A stretch of DNA of 63,915 nucleotides, counting the filler, from Octopus bimaculoides (lineage: Eukaryota), in NCBI RefSeq assembly GCF_001194135.2. It is 9 parts of 8 records of this genome, joined end to end, with 100 filler letters (N's around TTAATTAATTAA, not from the genome) between each part and the next. Parts side by side here need not be neighbours in the genome. Positions count along the whole stretch, not along the records: positions 8,902 to 27,939 come from NC_068983.1; 8 more parts are not named here. One strand, written 5' to 3'. This document shows, one piece after another, positions 13,532 through 23,904 of this stretch. Below the pieces are notes generated by a model. That model was given only the letters and a program-made list of their open reading frames with translations, did not search any database and was not told the DNA's origin. Position numbers and translations under genes: made by a program. Position 1 is the stretch's first letter. Each line of letters begins with the position of its first letter.

Positions 13532-15797
13532 NNNNNNNNNNNNNNNNNNNNNNNNNNNNNNNNNNNNNNNNNNNNNNNNNNNNNNNNNNNNNNNNNNNNN
13601 NNNNNNNNNNNNNNNNNNNNNNNNNNNNNNNNNNNNNNNNNNNNNNNNNNNNNNNNNNNNNNNNNNNNNNNNNNNNNNNNNNNNNNNNNNNNNNNNNNNN
13701 NNNNNNNNNNNNNNNNNNNNNNNNNNNNNNNNNNNNNNNNNNNNNNNNNNNNNNNNNNNNNNNNNNNNNNNNNNNNNNNNNNNNNNNNNNNNNNNNNNNN
13801 NNNNNNNNNNNNNNNNNNNNNNNNNNNNNNNNNNNNNNNNNNNNNNNNNNNNNNNNNNNNNNNNNNNNNNNNNNNNNNNNNNNNNNNNNNNNNNNNNNNN
13901 NNNNNNNNNNNNNNNNNNNNNNNNNNNNNNNNNNNNNNNNNNNNNNNNNNNNNNNNNNNNNNNNNNNNNNNNNNNNNNNNNNNNNNNNAATTTAAATTTG
14001 TGTCCATTTTTTAACTCTAAAAAGTTAATCTCCATATTTTCGCACTAGATTGGTGGAATAGAAATAAAAAAAAAGGTTTTAAAAAAGTTAAAAAACAAAA
14101 GAAAACATAAATTGCTTTCTCATATTACTACGGGATATTACTCTGAAAGACATCTTTGCAAACAGGTGAGTCGATTGATTACATTATGTTATCGCAGTTT
14201 TGTGAGATCTGGCTGTTATTTCTAACATGTGGATAGCCTGCATGAAGGCCTGAAGGTATATACATATATATATTTTTTTTTTTCTGTTGAAAAACTGAAA
14301 TTTTACAAATAATGTTTTTTTCAGAATCGTAATCTTCGTAATTTTCTACGTATTTCGTAAAAAAAAAAAAAAACTTTCCGGAAAAAGTAAAAAATAAAGG
14401 AGAGTGGGATAGTTTAAATTTTGAAAATGCGATATTTGAAAAATCCTCCATAACCAAAAGCGTGGGACTCGGTAAAAAAAAACAATATATATCCATTTCA
14501 CCGGAAGTTATGACGATAAAATCAGATCTTGTGAATTTTCCCAAAGTCTCCTCCCCATTCTCCAAGGTCATCAGCGCGCATTTGTTTTTTTCATATTCGT
14601 TTTCTACTTACTTTTTAACACCCACCAGGCTGGTTTATTGTTTTCGTTCCCGGGTGAAGATCTTTATATTGACCAATCTCACTATGGTCAACTTTGTCTT
14701 TCGGTCGATAAAAAAAAACTACCCATGAAGCGTTGAGGTCACTCTTTTCAACTAAACCCTTCCTCCCAAGATTACTAGACGTGTGTCTAAATGCAGACGG
14801 GATCGATTTTGCTTTCCAATTATTCTAGTGTTTTGTAGAATACGTACTAGGATTGAAATATTCGACTGTTTGTTATCTCAAAACTTAGAAATCAATAATT
14901 ACTACTTGCACAAAAGTAAAAAAAATCAATATTTACTACACATAACTATTTACTCAACATGAGGTGGCACTGAAATAGCAAATGCATTGAACCAATACCG
15001 CACGTCAGGTAATTAACTATTGAAAACGCAATGATCTGTTAACTGGCGTAAGAATCTACGAATTGCTCACTGCCTTGCACGGTAATTAATGACCTTTATA
15101 TTATAAGGCAAGTTTATTAGACAAACGAGAGCTGTTTGAATACCGCTTATTGACGCTAAAACAGCTAATGGATAAACATCGAAGTTGGTAAATAGTTATA
15201 TAGTTTTCCGCCCATAAGGTTGATGTTATCAGTTCAGCATATTCATTACTTCATGTCTTGACATTTAAATTAAAAAAATTATACCTAGTACATAACAACA
15301 GTAAGTTACAATAGTAATTCGTGCCTAGAATTTATCAAGATTTAACAAATGTGAACACATTTGTCTATATTTTTTATACAGAGCTTTGATTGAACGTGCC
15401 TGTAGGTATGTTTCTTTTCGTTCCGAAACGAAAAATTCTTAAATTCACAATTATTCGTTTAATTTCATCCACTAATTAATCAGTAATACATATACTTACA
15501 TGCATACATATAGAAATAAACCTGAATGATGACAGCTATACATACAAACATACATACATAGATATAAAGATATGTGTAAACACGTACGCGCACACATCCA
15601 CACACTCGCCCCCCCCCCACACACACACAGACGTGATGCGTGAGTGTGCATGTATATATATGTGCGTTTGCGTATTTCTATATGTGCGCGTATTCTAATA
15701 CATATGCGTGAAGGTAACACATAATGCATGTGTGCGTATATATATACACACACACAAATACACACACACAAATACACACACACACACACACATACAC

Positions 15798-15828
<31 letters not shown>

Positions 15829-15933
15829 TGTATGTATGTATGCATAGAGTGCTTGAAGTGGTATACAGGTATTGTATATTGAGATTTAAAGGAGGCAGTC
15901 AGAATATATGTATATACATATGCATACATGCGA

Positions 15934-16021
<88 letters not shown>

Positions 16022-16060
16022 CTGTGTGTGTATATTTATGTGTATGTATGTATATATAAA

Positions 16061-16092
<32 letters not shown>

Positions 16093-16169
16093 AGTATGTA
16101 TGTATGTATGTATAGAGTGTTTGATGTGATGTACAGATATTGTATATTGAGAAAAAGGAGGCAGTCAGA

Positions 16170-16206
<37 letters not shown>

Positions 16207-16243
16207 CATACACGCGCACACACACACACATACACACACACAT

Positions 16244-16274
<31 letters not shown>

Positions 16275-16304
16275 CNNNNNNNNNNNNNNNNNNNNNNNNN
16301 NNNN

Positions 16305-16337
<33 letters not shown>

Positions 16338-17539
16338 ATAATTGTTGTTTATTGATATCGATCTTGGAAAAGTTCATGTCGACACTTGGAATACCGTTCA
16401 TTTAACGAGGCCATCTCGTAAGTATTGAATTTCAAGCGTAATATGTAAGTAAGATGCTGGCAAACGAAACTTTTAGCTGATAGGCAATATCTCTGACTAA
16501 TCCTTTGTTAACTGTCCATAAAATATTAACAAAAAGAACAAAAGCCAAATAAGAAATTGAAGGAAGATGCACTTCTTATATTTTAAATGTCCATTCATAA
16601 TGACTATCGAGTAATTTTATTGCGTCTTCAGTTTTGTTTTGTGATTTCATTGAGTGAAGCCGTTCACTGTTAAGCCATAAATCAATTATGGCTTCAAGAA
16701 CCATAATGTTTTAGATAACATTTCAATCGAAATAAACTTATGGTTGTGTTGCTGTGTTTAGAGACGATCTAGAATCAGCTAGAATGAATCGACCAGCGAA
16801 GTATATTTCTAAGTAGTCGACATCCTTACTAGAAAATGCAGCCAATTATTATTAGATCACACACTACTGTTTGGCAATAAAAGAAAGTTCGTACTGGATA
16901 ATGTAGGCTTTGATAAAGAGAAATATTGAATGGGCAAGGCTGAAATGTTTGTGGACATCATTTTGCTTATTCAGGTTAGTTTTCGTATTATATTAAACAA
17001 CAAAATAAGATCATTGATCACTTTATTTCATAGTGCATCAAGCATTTCATTGTTTTAATGATCTTCCCAGCTTCTAAACAGTTGCAGGTGATTCGAAGAA
17101 TAGTTGGCTACTATATCTGAAGTAGAGTAGCCATGTTAACACTGGCTTATTTGCTAAAGACCATAGGGCGTTTCGACTGGCATACCTAATACGTCAAGCA
17201 ACTGAGTCGAGAATCTCCTTTATATCTTGGTAGTACAGTGTTATTTGAAGGAATTTTAGCTGCAAATTCAAAGGAGGAGTTACCCTTCAGAAGTTGCCTT
17301 CTCTCTTTCTCTCTCTCTTTCGCGCTCTCTCCTCTAACCCTGATTTGGCTCAGTTATTATCCTATAGAATTTAATAATTTAATCATAATAAAGCGGTTTT
17401 ATCAGTAAAATAATGCTAGTTGTTTTATACTACGTAAGCAAATTTATGTTGGAAAAATAATATTAAGTATATATCTCTTATGATTTTTGTTTTTGCTTGC
17501 TGGAAGTGGAGGAAGAGGCGGAGGTGGGTCATCGCTGTT

Positions 17540-19070: not shown

Positions 19071-19490
19071 TATGTGAGATGTAAGTGTTCCTACTGATAA
19101 AAATATATCTGTAAAGGAATTTGACAAATTAAGTAAATATAAGACCCTGTAAATTGAAATACAAAAGATGTGGGATCTTAAAGTGCGAACTGTTACTGTT
19201 ATTGTGGGTGCTCTAGGTATGCTAAAAAAAAACAGGAATGTCAGAAACATCTAGATAATATCCTAGGAGAGACAGGTCTCATAAAAATCCAAATGATTGC
19301 GCTAAGTACTAGCCATATTTTAGAAAAACCCTATCAATTTAAATGTATCTGTTGTATTACATGAAGATATTTCGCTACTGCCCCTGCCACTTGCCCTCCC
19401 CAAGCTTTCAGTCATATGTAGCATCCCTTATCCTTCACTTGCCCTTGGACACCGGGTATGTCTTAGCGATTGATTGTAACAAACACTTAA
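19071..19490 (+). mobile_element. R4/Dong-like element, 3' fragment (RLE end + 3' UTR), family 1
   Basis: DVSVPTDKNISVKEFDKLSKYK...MWDLKV...IVGALG; (TAA)n on both sides; 3' UTR homologous to 39729-39900. Confidence 0.85.
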
Positions 19491-19504: not shown

Positions 19505-20176
19505 GATACATGAAATACAGAATAGACAACACATCAGAAAGTGATAAGTGCAGAATTTGTGGACAAAATGGTGAAACCGTATGACATAACACCAGTCAAT
19601 GTACACCACTAGCCCCAAAAAGAATATAAGAGACGTCATGACAATATAGCAAGGATTGTCTATCGGACACTTTGAAACAAATATAGATTTGACAAAGAAA
19701 AATAGTGGTACGAATATAAACCTGAAGGCATCACCGAAAATGATAATGCAAAAATCCTATGGGATTTTATGATTCAGTGCGATAGAAAATAGGAAACCAC
19801 ACATAGTGTTAATTGAGAAAGAAAGCAAAAGATGCTGGAACATAGATATAACATCCCAGCTGACAAAAAGGTATGCGATAAGGAAGAAAGAAGAGTCGAT
19901 AAATTTGACAGGTTGGCTTGGGCGGTTAAGCAGTTGTGGTCGCTGAAAAAAAGTGGTAGTAGTACCAATAATTTTCGGAGCCCTGGGAACAGTCAGTAGA
20001 AATCTTGAGAAGTACATGGAAGAACTAGGGGTTGCAGTAAGGGTGGAGCGTTTGCAGAAAACAGCACTGCTTGGAACTGCTCGAATACTCCGGTTGGTGC
20101 TCGAATAATAAAGGGTGTTACCTTATTCCCTGGTAGTGAACAGCTGATACCGTAATACATTTCTAGCGTTAGAAAC

Positions 20177-20177: not shown

Positions 20178-20260
<83 letters not shown>

Positions 20261-20513
20261 TATTAATGTAGTTTATAAAAAAAAATAGAACTACTCATCG
20301 TCTGCTAAATTGCAAAGGCCTGTTTATCTGTTTGTTTATTTTATTCGCGTTCGTGTTTAGCTTCCTTTATGTGCTTTTAAAAATATACTGTTTCTGTTTA
20401 AATTATGTAATGTTTAATGTCAGACTTTTCTATACTCTGAGTAACGATGCAGATAATATTCTGCATTTTCTTGTTTAAAAAGCAAACAAAACGATTTTTA
20501 GATCGGTGGCTAT

Positions 20514-20558
20514 CGGACGCTGACGAAGGGAAATAACTCTGAAACTCGAGTCCGTTCG
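20514..20558 (+). ncRNA. Type I hammerhead ribozyme, canonical core
   Basis: Stem I CGGACG/CGTTCG, core CTGACGA, stem II AGGG-AAATAA-CTCT, GAA, palindromic stem III ACTCGAGT, GTC cleavage triplet (cut after 20552). Confidence 0.8.
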
Positions 20559-20869
20559 TGCTACAGATCACGATGAGAGGACTAACTTCCCTTGGCAAAA
20601 CAAAAATAGACAGGACACAGAAGTGTGTCGATAAGCCAGCTGGATGAGATGTCCTCCTGGGGCTAAAAGCAACAGTAACATCCACCCCTAGGGGTCAGCG
20701 ACATTTAAGTGGCAATATACTTCACTTTATCCTGCAGTTACTGTTAATACCTCGTTTAGAGAATTAACATTGCTTGTTTTCCCTTTTTCGATATCAGTGA
20801 ATAATTTCACTGGAAAAAGGTATAAAGTTTTGCCAGGAATTAGCTTTCTCATCGTAGATCGGTGGCTAT

Positions 20870-20914
20870 CGGACGCAGACGAAGGGAAATAACCCTGAAA
20901 CTCGAGTCCGTTCG
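20870..20914 (+). ncRNA. Type I hammerhead ribozyme, second copy (U4A core variant)
   Basis: Same fold with stem II AGGG/CCCT perfect and core CAGACGA. Predicted cut after 20908. Confidence 0.7.
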
Positions 20915-21289
20915 TGCTACAGATCACGATGAGAGGGATAACTTCCCTTGGCAAAACGATCTTTATTCGCTCAAATATTCGTAGAAAAATCCAACATTTT
21001 GCAGGCCTATTCCGACGACGTCCATACACAGAGTCAGATGTCTGCCTTTTGGTGTGATAAATTAAAAAAAAAGAACAAAGAAAACAAAATCCAAATCAGA
21101 TCCATGCACATCCCACACATTTGGACTTACAAACAAACATGAACTCAGAGAAAATAACGATATTAGGGCACAGCAAACGACTGAAACAAAGTCCTGCCTG
21201 TACTCAGGACACACAAAGCTGTATTTGTTTGTGCAATGAAAACACGCAATAAAAGAATAAAACTACTGGTGATGTGTACGGTATTGATC

Positions 21290-21440
21290 ATTATGATGAT
21301 GATAATGATGATGGTGATGATGATGATGATGACGGCAAAAGCGCTGATGATGATGAAGGAGATGATGATGATGGTGATGATGATGATAATGATGATGACA
21401 ATGGCATTGATGATGAAGGCGATGATGATGATGATGTTGT

Positions 21441-21471
<31 letters not shown>

Positions 21472-21536
21472 CATAACAATGGCGCCGATGATGAAGGAGA
21501 TGATGATGACAACAATGATGATGATGATGATGATTT
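21290..21536. repeat. Cryptic (GAT)n minisatellite with a higher-order unit
   Basis: GATGATGAAGG(A/C)GATGATGAT occurs three times, each preceded by a GC-containing spacer. Confidence 0.8.
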
Positions 21537-21956
21537 CTTTAAATATCCGCAAATAATAGAAGCTGAGGTATTTTAGAATTAAGCGTTCTAATTACGATTT
21601 ACGAAGGCAATAAAAGCAGAATTCTTCGTATTTTGTCCATTTTGTATCTCGAAGGGGGCAGGAAAGTTTATTTTCGACTCACAACACGAAAGTATCACCT
21701 TTACCATCGTTCCATAACATTTAGCTTCTGATCTTTCCACCGATGCCAACCCAGCTGAACATTTAATGACAGACGATTTCACCAATACTGAATTCCTTAA
21801 CATTCTTTTTTCCTTCTTTCTATCAACTATACATGAGCTTCAAAAGATCTTGCGGAAAATTCTGAAAAAGTTTGGCAACATTATTAAAGAAAGCATTTGC
21901 GAAGAATGCGCGCGTATGTGTGTATGTGTGTGTCTGCGTGTGTGTGTATACATATA

Positions 21957-22005
<49 letters not shown>

Positions 22006-22223: not shown

Positions 22224-22441
22224 NNNNNNNNNNNNNNNNNNNNNNNNNNNNNNNNNNNNNNNNNNNNNNNNNNNNNNNNNNNNNNNNNNNNNNNNNNNNN
22301 NNNNNNNNNNNNNNNNNNNNNNNNNNNNNNNNNNNNNNNNNNNNNNNNNNNNNNNNNNNNNNNNNNNNNNNNNNNNNNNNNNNNNNNNNNNNNNNNNNNN
22401 NNNNNNNNNNNNNNNNNNNNNNNNNNNNNNNNNNNNNNNNN

Positions 22442-22484
<43 letters not shown>

Positions 22485-22769
22485 GAGAGAGAGAGAGAGG
22501 AGAGGGGGAGAGGAGGGACGTAGAACTCTAAGTAACAGTCTTGTGATGTTTTCATATCTCTCTCTCTCTAACTCTATACATACACACACACAGATATATA
22601 TATATATATATATACATATATGTGTGTGTGTGTGCGTGTGTGTGCGTGCGTGTGTGTGTGTGTAGGAGTTTGTTTAGGAGTTTTTATGCGTTAGTTACTC
22701 TGTAACATCGGACTAGTCTGGTTGAAAAGATAAGCACACATAAACTTGAATGCATTAATAAGTACAGCC

Positions 22770-23119
22770 AGTTTCTAAAATCACCGCTAACCTCTGGCCA
22801 CCTACTTCCCCAGACTGCAACCCCTTTGATTATTATTTGTAGGGCGCAGTTGAGTGAGAGACAGATAAAATTCCTTGTAACACCAAAGATGTACTGAAGG
22901 CAAGGATTATGACCGGATTCAACAAATTGAACAAGGAGATTGTCGAGAAGAGCTGCATGAGATTCCAAAGTCGTCTGGACGTTGTGGTTGAACCGAATGG
23001 CGATTTTATAGAATTCAAGATGTTTCTATGTAATTCTGGTAAATATAACTGCTAAAATGAGGTGTCAGTGTTATTTTCATTTTGTGTAATTTAGACGACA
23101 GTTTATTCGCCGCACCCTG
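22770..23119 (+). mobile_element. Tc1/mariner (DD37D/maT-like) 3' fragment with TIR
   Basis: LWPPTSPDCNPFDYY...RFQSRLDVVVEPNGDFIE; ends CACCCTG followed by TA (23120-23121). Confidence 0.85.
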
Positions 23120-23904
23120 TATATCCCACCTCTTACTATATATATATATATATATATNNNNNNNNNNNNNNNNNNNNNNNNNNNNNNNNNNNNNNNNNNN
23201 NNNNNNNNNNNNNNNNNNNNNNNNNNNNNNNNNNNNNNNNNNNNNNNNNNNNNNNNNNNNNNNNNNNNNNNNNNNNNNNNNNNNNNNNNNNNNNNNNNNN
23301 NNNNNNNNNNNNNNNNNNNNNNNNNNNNNNNNNNNNNNNNNNNNNNNNNNNNNNNNNNNNNNNNNNNNNNNNNNNNNNNNNNNNNNNNNNNNNNNNNNNN
23401 NNNNNNNNNNNNNNNNNNNNNNNNNNNNNNNNNNNNNNNNNNNNNNNNNNNNNNNNNNNNNNNNNNNNNNNNNNNNNNNNNNNNNNNNNNNNNNNNNNNN
23501 NNNNNNNNNNNNNNNNNNNNNNNNNNNNNNNNNNNNNNNNNNNNNNNNNNNNNNNNNNNNNNNNNNNNNNNNNNNNNNNNNNNNNNNNNNNNNNNNNNNN
23601 NNNNNNNNNNNNNNNNNNNNNNNNNNNNNNNNNNNNNNNNNNNNNNNNNNNNNNNNNNNNNNNNNNNNNNNNNNNNNNNNNNNNNNNNNNNNNNNNNNNN
23701 NNNNNNNNNNNNNNNNNNNNNNNNNNNNNNNNNNNNNNNNNNNNNNNNNNNNNNNNNNNNNNNNNNNNNNNNNNNNNNNNNNNNNNNNNNNNNNNNNNNN
23801 NNNNNNNNNNNNNNNNNNNNNNNNNNNNNNNNNNNNNNNNNNNNNNNNNNNNNNNNNNNNNNNNNNNNNNNNNNNNNNNNNNNNNNNNNNNNNNNNNNNN
23901 NNNN

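What the first reader, a model, noticed from the sequence alone, without database searches (positions are those of the whole stretch)
20487..20964. Retrozyme-like element predicted to release a 356-nt circular RNA
Seen: two 103-bp direct repeats (4 differences), each folding into a type I HHR (CUGACGA / CAGACGA core, GAA, palindromic stem III ACUCGAGU, GUC site), with cut sites exactly 356 nt apart (after 20552 and 20908). The monomer is strongly self-complementary. GTTTTGCCA (20827-20835) and TCTCATCGT (20847-20855) pair perfectly with TGGCAAAAC and ACGATGAGA in the repeat. There are hairpins at 20614-20629 and 20782-20820, and GATCGGTGGC/GCTACAGATC extends stem I. A 13-bp near-TSD (1 mismatch) flanks the unit. 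Established: retrozymes are non-autonomous HHR-bearing retroelements that produce circRNAs, and palindromic stem III HHRs can act as dimers. Inference: this is a 1.3-mer copy reverse-transcribed from a circular or tandem RNA. It is a candidate cephalopod retrozyme family, possibly mobilised by the Penelope-like or RLE-type RTs seen nearby.
Basis: partly seen in the sequence, partly recalled or inferred. Interest (0 to 1): 0.88.

Follow-up and report, generated by a model that had tools for sequence, protein, structure and literature searches.

The report
Hammerhead-ribozyme retrozyme insertion, octopus-type genome
This is one slightly decayed copy of a small non-coding mobile element (a "retrozyme") that carries two self-cleaving hammerhead ribozymes 356 bases apart; the class is already known in animals, but the papers I could search do not describe it in cephalopods.

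Summary
Two 103-nt direct repeats lie 356 nt apart and differ at 4 positions.

- **Ribozymes.** Each repeat holds a canonical animal type I hammerhead. A covariance model built from 31 unrelated metagenomic type I hammerheads scores the two copies 45.5 and 43.1 bits; the next best hit in the 19-kb piece scores 9.6.
- **Insertion.** The unit is flanked by a 14-nt target-site duplication with 1 mismatch (p about 4e-4).
- **RNA fold.** The 356-nt monomer, folded as a circle, gives -120.5 kcal/mol (z = -7.3). The palindromic helix III forms only between two copies, so a double hammerhead is close to the minimum-energy fold of the whole transcript.
- **Second copy.** Another copy that shares the interior is annotated, as a spurious antisense ORF, in Octopus bimaculoides (UniProt A0A0L8IHK6).

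The best reading is a 1.29-unit retrotransposed copy of a non-LTR retrozyme, which is a non-autonomous relative of Penelope-like elements.

Caveats:
- The downstream ribozyme has a core U4-to-A change, so this locus is probably a poor RNA source.
- Copy number, expression, circularity and the mobilising reverse transcriptase are untested.
- The host species is not verified.

It is a new member of a known kind, of moderate interest.

The parts
20487..20500 (.). Left copy of the target-site duplication, CAAAACGATTTTTA
   Evidence: the repeat finder family D7, 14 nt, 93%. The same geometry gives such a match at 0.04% of non-low-complexity positions and in 4 of 20000 flank shuffles.
20499..20601 (+). 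Upstream partial unit: direct repeat copy 1, equal to the last 103 nt of the unit
   Evidence: the repeat finder D2; the 4 differences from copy 2 are listed.
20504..20566 (+). Hammerhead ribozyme 1, type I, with an intact core. It has distal helix I, a UAU/U internal loop, a 6-bp helix I, core CUGACGA, a 4-bp helix II with loop AAAUAA, GAA, and the palindromic helix III ACUCGAGU. Cleavage falls after C20552.
   Evidence: R1 covariance model 45.5 bits, E = 4.8e-12, full length, no non-canonical pair. Rfam RF00163 gives 17.9 bits, positions 1-45 of 45. Descriptor hit with 0 hits in 2000 shuffles.
20553..20908 (+). Predicted excised monomer, from cleavage site to cleavage site: 356 nt, GC 43%
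   Evidence: Circular minimum free energy -120.5 kcal/mol against -81.0 +/- 5.4 for shuffles, z = -7.3. 64% of bases are paired.
20560..20601 (+). 5' arm of the long closing stem. It pairs with 20827-20866 and continues hammerhead helix I.
   Evidence: Helices listed; pair probabilities 0.92-1.0.
20602..20854 (+). Non-coding interior of the unit (253 nt), with hairpins at 20614-20629 and 20782-20820
   Evidence: Stops in all six frames. No Rfam family. Hairpins appear in the circular fold. 20607-20681 is shared with Octopus bimaculoides A0A0L8IHK6.
20827..20866 (+). 3' arm of the long closing stem
20855..20957 (+). Direct repeat copy 2: the 3' end of the full unit 20602-20957
20860..20922 (+). 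Hammerhead ribozyme 2. It has the same fold as ribozyme 1, but the core reads CAGACGA (U4 to A at 20877). Helix II has G-C where copy 1 has G-U (20894). The cleavage site falls after C20908.
   Evidence: R1 covariance model 43.1 bits, E = 2.7e-11; differences.
20952..20965 (.). Right copy of the target-site duplication, CAAAACGATCTTTA. Its first 6 nt are also the last 6 nt of the unit (priming microhomology).
   Evidence: the sequence is shown.

Best explanation
Positions 20501-20957 are one retrotransposed, non-coding copy of a metazoan non-LTR retrozyme. This is a short non-autonomous element related to Penelope-like elements (PLEs). Its 356-nt unit carries one canonical type I hammerhead.

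**Structure of the copy.** It holds 1.29 units: the last 103 nt of a unit followed by a full unit. A transcript through it therefore contains two hammerheads in tandem.

**How cleavage would work.** Helix III is only an 8-nt palindrome. It is unstable within one motif, so the two motifs pair with each other to form a double hammerhead. [quoted passage not shown] By analogy with coral, mussel and axolotl retrozymes, a host tRNA ligase would then close that RNA into a highly self-paired circle.

**How new copies would arise.** A reverse transcriptase supplied in trans would copy the circle, or an uncleaved multimer, for more than one turn. Here the run was primed by a nicked target whose 3' end (GTTTTG) anneals to CAAAAC in the RNA. 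That would produce both the 8-14-nt target-site duplication and the more-than-unit-length insert.

**State of this locus.** It is a decaying copy. The two repeats differ at 4 of 103 positions, the duplication has 1 mismatch, and the downstream ribozyme has lost the conserved U4.

**Shown here:** the repeats, the ribozyme folds, the target-site duplication with microhomology, the self-pairing, the preference for a double hammerhead, and a second copy in Octopus bimaculoides.

**Inferred:** transcription, cleavage, circularisation, target-primed reverse transcription, and which reverse transcriptase acts.
For: **Repeats.** Two copies, 103 nt, 356 nt apart.

**Ribozymes.**
- Rfam Hammerhead_1 aligns over the full model.
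- My own descriptor finds 1 site and 0 in 2000 shuffles.
- Model R1 was built from 31 metagenomic type I hammerheads that show covariation in helices I, II and distal I. It scores 45.5 and 43.1 bits against a next best of 9.6.
- That match includes the GCUAY bulge and the 3' U-GC, neither of which was in the pattern used to retrieve the training set.

**Insertion.** The target-site duplication has p about 4e-4.

**RNA fold.**
- Circular fold z = -7.3, 64% paired.
- Helix III scores 0.0 kcal/mol as a hairpin and -10.7 as a duplex.
- The double-hammerhead fold scores -160.2, two single hammerheads -144.6, and the unconstrained minimum -161.7.

**Non-coding, single polarity.** No ORF, no other ribozyme and no hammerhead on the minus strand.

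**Second copy.** It covers 20509-20681 and is annotated in Octopus bimaculoides.

**Class definition and life cycle.** PMC7229834 and PMC7761336. The link to PLEs comes from bioRxiv 10.64898/2026.07.22.740005.

**Comparator.** An analogous 1.4-unit copy with a 260-nt unit lies in metagenome locus L006.
Against: - Only one further copy could be found, and it could be an ortholog rather than a paralog.
- Family-specific DNA patterns found nothing in the metagenome or viral collections.
- No other copy lies in the 19-kb piece.
- The Rfam score is below the gathering threshold (17.9 against 34), and the match is invisible in wider searches.
- A10.1-U11.1 replaces the usual G-C at the base of helix II.
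- Copy 2 has U4 changed to A.
- There are no RNA data.
- No PLE reverse transcriptase lies in the piece.
- Published retrozymes are mostly longer tandem arrays.
Confidence: 0.78

Rival explanations
1. It is an internally deleted or 5'-truncated Penelope-like element. On this reading the two repeats are its pseudo-LTRs, formed by the partial-tandem insertion typical of PLEs. The hammerheads are pLTR ribozymes, and no circular RNA stage is involved.
For: PLE insertions are typically partial tandems with hammerheads near the 3' end (PMC8557442; PMC4209133). Retrozymes and pLTRs are phylogenetically intermingled in Xenopus. The 103-nt partial unit followed by a full unit has exactly that layout.
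Against: - Animal PLE hammerheads are minimal variants that lack helix III and the loop-loop nucleotides (PMC4209133, PMC7761336). This one is canonical, with both.
- The 253-nt interior has no reverse transcriptase or GIY-YIG remnant and has stops in all frames.
- The strongly self-paired 356-nt unit (z = -7.3) is the retrozyme signature.
Confidence: 0.12
2. It is a SINE-like element copied from a linear RNA with a fixed 3' end (...GGCAAAAC). The extra 103 nt would come from template switching. The hammerhead only trims read-through transcripts and no circle is made.
For: The insert ends exactly at CAAAAC, with microhomology to the target, as in target-primed reverse transcription. [quoted passage not shown] Octopus genomes hold hundreds of unclassified SINE families (PMC13282606).
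Against: - ARAGORN and Rfam find no tRNA-, 5S- or 7SL-like head.
- The ends of the insert do not coincide with the ribozyme cut sites.
- Canonical type I hammerhead units of this size were shown to accumulate as circles in all three phyla tested (PMC7229834).
Confidence: 0.07
3. It is a chance local duplication of a sequence that merely resembles a hammerhead, or a non-mobile micro-satellite repeat.
For: Only 1.29 units are present, and Rfam's default search reports nothing.
Against: - The flanking target-site duplication has p about 4e-4.
- Covariance-model E-values are 1e-11 to 1e-12.
- The descriptor finds 0 hits in 2000 shuffles.
- A second copy exists in Octopus bimaculoides.
Confidence: 0.02
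4. It is an endogenised cDNA of an infectious viroid-like or HDV-like circular RNA, not of a genomic retroelement.
For: The RNA is small, highly structured and hammerhead-bearing, with a more-than-unit-length cDNA.
Against: - The hammerhead is present in one polarity only.
- There is no ORF.
- The ribozyme is the animal genomic type I form.
- The viral-contig scan found nothing.
- A second diverged genomic copy exists.
Confidence: 0.01

Closest known systems
Metazoan non-LTR retrozymes (Cervera & de la Pena 2020, PMC7229834), especially the Mytilus galloprovincialis family (350-390 bp) and axolotl Rtz_353
   Same: - One canonical type I hammerhead per unit of about 350 nt.
- Helix III of 2 bp plus a palindromic tetraloop, which favours dimeric cleavage.
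- GC below 50%.
- No LTR, PBS, PPT or ORF.
- Target-site duplication longer than 4 bp.
- A highly self-paired predicted circle.
   Different: - There is no detectable sequence similarity outside the ribozyme, as expected because families are species-specific.
- This is a dispersed 1.29-unit copy rather than a long tandem array.
- Helix II starts with A-U rather than G-C.
- Expression and circularity are untested.
- The papers I searched do not report the class from cephalopods.
Canonical animal type I hammerhead (Rfam RF00163; newt satellite 2, Schistosoma Sm-alpha)
   Same: - 6-bp helix I.
- Core CUGACGA.
- 4-bp helix II with a 6-nt loop containing AAAUA.
- GAAAC, palindromic helix III and a GUC site.
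- GCUAY bulge and 3' U-GC in helix I, as in 31 metagenomic examples.
   Different: - The score is below Rfam's gathering threshold (17.9 against 34), because the helix II sequence differs from the strongly conserved GUCC/GGAC.
- It has A10.1-U11.1. That variant is seen once among the comparators, in L064.
Penelope-like element pseudo-LTRs with minimal hammerheads (Cervera & de la Pena 2014, PMC4209133)
   Same: - Type I hammerhead inside direct repeats made by a partial-tandem insertion.
- Hammerhead near the 3' end.
- Probable dimeric action.
- The likely evolutionary source and mobiliser.
   Different: - No RT/GIY-YIG ORF lies between the repeats.
- The ribozyme is the full canonical form, not the minimal form.
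Plant LTR retrozymes (Cervera et al. 2016, PMC4918200)
   Same: Non-autonomous, two hammerheads flanking a non-coding region, and a circular RNA intermediate.
   Different: Plant elements have type III hammerheads in roughly 350-bp LTRs, a tRNA-Met PBS, a PPT and 4-bp target-site duplications. None of these is present here.

Membership tests
Hammerhead ribozyme, type I (canonical animal form) | Conserved core: C3 U4 G5 A6 N7 G8 A9, G12 A13 A14, A15.1-U16.1, H17 | tested here: met
   Copy 1 has CUGACGA ... GAA A...U C, all present. Copy 2 fails at one position (U4 to A, 20877).
Hammerhead ribozyme, type I (canonical animal form) | Three helices around the core, with helix I open-ended | tested here: met
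   6-bp helix I, 4-bp helix II, and A-U/C-G closing a palindromic helix III. The covariance-model alignment shows no non-canonical pair, and the descriptor finds 0 hits in 2000 shuffles.
Hammerhead ribozyme, type I (canonical animal form) | Loop 1 / loop 2 nucleotides used for the tertiary contact | tested here: met
   GCUAU bulge, 3' U-GC and loop AAAUAA align to the consensus GCUAC / U-GC / cAAAUA of 31 independent sequences. The contact itself is not testable here.
Hammerhead ribozyme, type I (canonical animal form) | Reaches Rfam RF00163 gathering score (34 bits) | tested here: not met
   17.9 bits, E = 0.022, and only when a 62-nt stretch is searched. Nothing appears in wider searches. 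A model trained on a broader set gives 45.5 and 43.1 bits.
Hammerhead ribozyme, type I (canonical animal form) | Self-cleavage at H17 | not testable with these tools
   Needs in vitro transcription.
Metazoan non-LTR retrozyme | Non-coding unit of about 170-400 nt carrying a type I hammerhead, present in more than one unit so that a monomer is bracketed by two ribozymes | tested here: met
   356-nt unit, 1.29 units, two hammerheads 356 nt apart. Stops in all frames.
Metazoan non-LTR retrozyme | No LTR, PBS or PPT; GC below 50%; target-site duplication longer than 4 bp when present | tested here: met
   GC 43%. Target-site duplication of 8-14 nt. I saw no tRNA-complementary or polypurine motif on reading the sequence.
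Metazoan non-LTR retrozyme | Monomer predicted to fold into a stable, highly self-paired circle | tested here: met
   -120.5 kcal/mol, z = -7.3, 64% paired.
Metazoan non-LTR retrozyme | Multi-copy, dispersed or tandem in the genome | tested here: inconclusive
   One further copy is known, through UniProt A0A0L8IHK6 of Octopus bimaculoides. No eukaryotic genome could be searched by DNA.
Metazoan non-LTR retrozyme | Expressed as linear and circular RNA of unit length | not testable with these tools
   No transcriptome access.
Metazoan non-LTR retrozyme | Co-occurs with autonomous Penelope-like elements | not tested
   No PLE lies in this piece. The literature reports PLEs, including recently active ones, in Octopus vulgaris (PMC13282606).
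Penelope-like element (pLTR-ORF-pLTR) | RT plus GIY-YIG ORF between the repeats | tested here: not met
   The 253-nt interior has stops in all frames, and its translation finds no relative.
Penelope-like element (pLTR-ORF-pLTR) | Minimal hammerhead without helix III or loop contacts (animal PLEs) | tested here: not met
   The canonical form is present.
Plant LTR retrozyme | Type III hammerhead in roughly 350-bp LTRs, PBS, PPT, 4-bp target-site duplication | tested here: not met
   Type I topology, 103-nt repeats, 8-14-nt target-site duplication.
Viroid-like / HDV-like infectious circular RNA | Ribozymes in both polarities, or an antigen ORF | tested here: not met
   Only plus-strand hammerheads and no other ribozyme family. 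No ORF.

The most novel reading that the evidence does not exclude
This locus may be a fossil of a still-active cephalopod retrozyme family. Part of the large "unclassified SINE" fraction of octopus genomes would then consist of such elements, with intact copies producing abundant 356-nt hammerhead-processed circular RNAs in octopus tissues. That would extend ribozyme-made circular RNAs to cephalopods and give a tractable dimer-dependent type I hammerhead with an A10.1-U11.1 base pair.
Probability: 0.3. Interest if true: 0.55.

Novelty: new member of a known kind. Interest (0 to 1): 0.38.

Why it matters
Retrozymes are the only known route by which animal genomes make circular RNAs with their own ribozymes. 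They are patchily catalogued, mostly in cnidarians, bivalves, amphibians and other vertebrates.

A cephalopod family would fill a gap in molluscs. It would also help re-annotate unclassified short repeats in octopus genomes. It already exposes at least one spurious protein model, UniProt A0A0L8IHK6.

This copy is also unusually informative about how such elements integrate. It has a clean target-site duplication, a 6-nt primer-template microhomology, and ends that do not coincide with the ribozyme cut sites. These features argue that integration started at an internal site of a circular or multimeric RNA, rather than at the end of a cleaved monomer.

Tried and rejected
- **Rfam on the whole piece and on 571 nt.** No hammerhead was reported, only microsatellite-driven miRNA look-alikes below threshold. 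The hammerhead match appears only when 62 nt are searched.
- **Protein search with a 107-aa antisense translation of the tandemised unit.** No hits.
- **Family-specific hammerhead DNA pattern in the metagenome and viral collections.** 0 hits.
- **BLAST of the element against the rest of the piece and against 73 fetched loci.** Nothing beyond the repeat itself.
- **Contigs carrying the closest relatives of the upstream LINE tail (L001, L002).** They come from other organisms and hold no copy.
- **P0121, a 2557-aa hit with 12 matched stretches.** This is a bacterial repeat protein matched by low-complexity chance and was rejected.
- **Contig look-up for P0122.** Not on record, so the DNA of the second copy could not be read.
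- **tRNA-like head or Pol III origin.** ARAGORN found nothing.
- **Loose hammerhead pattern hits at 14512, 22103 and 26851.** The covariance model does not support them.
- **Pfam on the stitched LINE tail and the mariner-like fragment.** No family reached threshold.

Full report
**1.

The repeat finder reports two 103-nt direct repeats, 20499-20601 and 20855-20957. They are 96% identical and 356 nt apart. The four differences are 20521 T/20877 A, 20538 T/20894 C and 20581-82 AC/20937-38 GA.

Reading copy 1 gives:
- helix I, CGGACG (20514-19) with CGUUCG (20553-58);
- core CUGACGA (20520-26);
- helix II, AGGG/CUCU with loop AAAUAA;
- GAA (20541-43);
- the palindrome ACUCGAGU (20544-51);
- C17 at 20552.

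**2. The motifs are real type I hammerheads, not chance.**

- Rfam's default and 571-nt searches report no hammerhead.
- When only 62 nt are searched, RF00163 Hammerhead_1 aligns over its full length (positions 1-45 of 45) at 20514-20558. The score is 17.9 bits, below the gathering score of 34.
- A descriptor of my own required a 6-bp helix I, CUGANGA, a 4-5-bp helix II, GAA, an A..U helix III and H17. It finds this one site in the piece and none in 2000 dinucleotide shuffles of the 17.5 kb, both strands.

For an independent test I scanned metagenome contigs with a generic pattern for canonical animal type I hammerheads, which gave 71 loci. I kept 31 distinct 63-nt sequences with an intact helix I. 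They show compensatory changes in helix I, helix II and a distal extension of helix I: 15 of 17 pairs change on both sides, and 0 of 500 shuffles reach that.

I built covariance model R1 from them. With filters off it scores 45.5 bits (E = 4.8e-12) at 20504-20566 and 43.1 bits (E = 2.7e-11) at 20860-20922. Both hits are full length with no non-canonical pair, and the next best hit in the piece scores 9.6 bits.

The core, loop 2 and helix III geometry were in the retrieval pattern, so they match by construction. These features were not in the pattern and still match:
- the 6-bp helix I;
- the GCUAY bulge 5' of it;
- the single U followed by GC 3' of it;
- the distal helix.

This is the canonical form with the loop-1/loop-2 nucleotides. 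It is not the minimal form found in animal Penelope-like elements (PMC4209133; PMC7761336).

Two departures are worth noting. Helix II begins with A10.1-U11.1 instead of G-C, a variant seen once among the comparators, in L064. Copy 2 has A in place of the conserved U4.

**3. The element is a discrete insertion.**

CAAAACGATTTTTA (20487-20500) and CAAAACGATCTTTA (20952-20965) flank the repeats (family D7). With the same geometry, such a match occurs at 0.04% of non-low-complexity positions in the piece and in 4 of 20000 flank shuffles. A local tandem duplication would not create this.

The first six bases of the duplication (CAAAAC) are also the last six of the unit (...UUGGCAAAAC). In target-primed reverse transcription, the primer is the bottom strand ending at the left edge of the duplicated target. 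Here that primer would end ...GTTTTG-3' and could anneal to CAAAAC in the RNA. That geometric argument is an inference.

The insert (20501-20957) is 1.29 units long. Its ends do not coincide with the ribozyme cut sites, so the template was not a cleaved linear monomer. It was either a circle or an uncleaved multimer.

**4. RNA folding fits a retrozyme.**

- The 356-nt monomer (GC 43%) folded as a circle gives -120.5 kcal/mol, against -81.0 +/- 5.4 for dinucleotide shuffles (z = -7.3). 64% of its bases are paired.
- A long stem joins 20560-20601 to 20827-20866 with pair probabilities of 0.92-1.0. It directly continues hammerhead helix I.
- Helix III alone does not fold (0.0 kcal/mol), but two copies pair at -10.7 kcal/mol.
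- On the 20499-20964 transcript, an enforced double hammerhead gives -160.2 kcal/mol and two single hammerheads give -144.6. The unconstrained minimum (-161.7) already contains the inter-copy helix III.

Dimer-dependent cleavage is the behaviour described for newt, axolotl and many animal type I hammerheads (PMC6155905; PMC7229834).

In a double hammerhead, each active site combines the core of one copy with the cut site of the other. The intact upstream core could therefore cut 20908 in dimer mode and 20552 in single mode. The U4-to-A change weakens monomer release but does not strictly exclude it. This is an inference.

**5. Other copies and the host.**

The DNA collections available hold no cephalopod genome. 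Family-specific patterns found nothing, and the piece holds no other copy.

Searching 1.84 billion protein representatives with the spurious antisense ORF of the element (window:20730-20957:-) returned P0122. It has 54 aa and 83% identity. It is UniRef/UniProt A0A0L8IHK6, an "uncharacterized protein" of Octopus bimaculoides.

tblastn maps it to 20681-20607 (92% over 25 aa, in the interior) and then to 20610-20509 / 20954-20865 (the repeat with the hammerhead). The frame change between the two parts falls in the A-rich tract at the unit boundary. So at least one more copy shares 80 nt of interior as well as the ribozyme, and it lies in an octopus.

Its DNA could not be fetched. I cannot say whether it is a paralog or the orthologous locus of a sister species, and the window's own species stays unverified. 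The piece itself is AT-rich, full of microsatellites and assembly gaps, and has no long ORF.

**6. Surroundings.**

- A decayed C-terminal tail of a non-LTR retrotransposon ORF lies 0.4-1.4 kb upstream, at about 19108-19233 and 19543-20105. It has 208 homologs, the best at 62% identity, some carrying zf-RVT and with RVT_1 neighbours. It is followed by (ATT)n at 20178-20255.
- A mariner/Tc1-like transposase remnant lies at about 22780-23025.
- No Penelope-like reverse transcriptase is in the piece.

The literature reports recently active PLEs in Octopus vulgaris (PMC13282606).

**7. Comparison with what is known.**

The element meets every sequence-level criterion of metazoan non-LTR retrozymes (PMC7229834):
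- a type I hammerhead in a unit of 170-400 nt (the mussel family is 350-390 bp);
- no LTR, PBS, PPT or ORF;
- GC below 50%;
- a target-site duplication longer than 4 bp;
- a highly self-paired predicted circle.

[quoted passage not shown] A metagenomic comparator, L006, has the same layout: 102-nt repeats 260 nt apart, each with a hammerhead, the second decayed.

Multi-copy status is only partly shown. Expression and circularity are untestable here.

None of the papers I could search mentions a hammerhead or a retrozyme in a cephalopod.

**8. Age (rough inference).**

If the two repeats were copied from one template, 4 differences in 103 nt (3.9%) and 1 mismatch in the 14-nt duplication suggest an insertion some millions of years old. 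The counts are too small, and the host too uncertain, for a firmer estimate.

**9. Verdict.**

This is a well-supported, slightly decayed 1.29-unit copy of a retrozyme with a canonical, probably dimer-dependent, type I hammerhead. It is a new member of a known kind. The interest is moderate: it extends the class to cephalopods and shows a clean integration footprint, but the mechanism and class are as already described.

Noticed in passing
window 19108-19233 and 19543-20105 (+), with (ATT)n at 20178-20255: Two frameshifted, stop-ridden fragments of the C-terminal tail of a non-LTR retrotransposon ORF (...CRICGQNGETV..., ...LQKTALLGTARILRLVLE), ending just before an (ATT)26 microsatellite. There are 208 homologs in invertebrate assemblies, the best at 62% identity.
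   Followed up: partly
window about 22780-23025 (+): Remnant resembling the C-terminus of a mariner/Tc1-type transposase (WPPTSPDCNPFDYYL...CNTKDVLKARI...). I recognised it by eye only; Pfam gave no hit at E <= 0.1.
   Followed up: partly
window 21255-21549: Imperfect tandem array with 9- and 15-nt spacing (GAT/GAC-rich; it translates as poly-Asp, poly-Ile or poly-Met depending on frame). It lies about 300 nt downstream of the element (repeat finder D1).
   Followed up: no
window 15725-16340, 21913-22001, 22569-22659, 27638-27939: Dozens of sub-threshold Rfam miRNA matches (mir-3149, mir-297, mir-1277 and others) all sit on (TG)n/(TA)n/(CA)n microsatellites and match on both strands. They are low-complexity artefacts, not miRNA genes.
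   Followed up: yes
UniProt A0A0L8IHK6_OCTBM (P0122): This 54-aa "uncharacterized protein" of Octopus bimaculoides is an antisense translation of a retrozyme copy (interior plus hammerhead). It is almost certainly a spurious gene model.
   Followed up: yes
L006 1478-1849 (-), metagenome contig ERZ1740055 NODE-24695: An unrelated element with the same layout: 102-nt direct repeats 260 nt apart, each with a canonical type I hammerhead (71.6 and 55.8 bits). The second hammerhead is decayed (GAAAU, loop UAAAAA).
   Followed up: partly
L007, L037, L042, L058 (metagenome sample Ga0126343): Near-identical canonical type I hammerheads occur as inverted pairs 200-450 nt apart. This recalls the inverted partial copies described for Penelope-like insertions. 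Most other loci carry a single hammerhead.
   Followed up: no
window 13532-13988, 16276-16304, 22224-22441, 23158-23904, 27092-27177: Runs of N (assembly gaps), several bordered by microsatellites. The piece comes from a gapped draft assembly.
   Followed up: no
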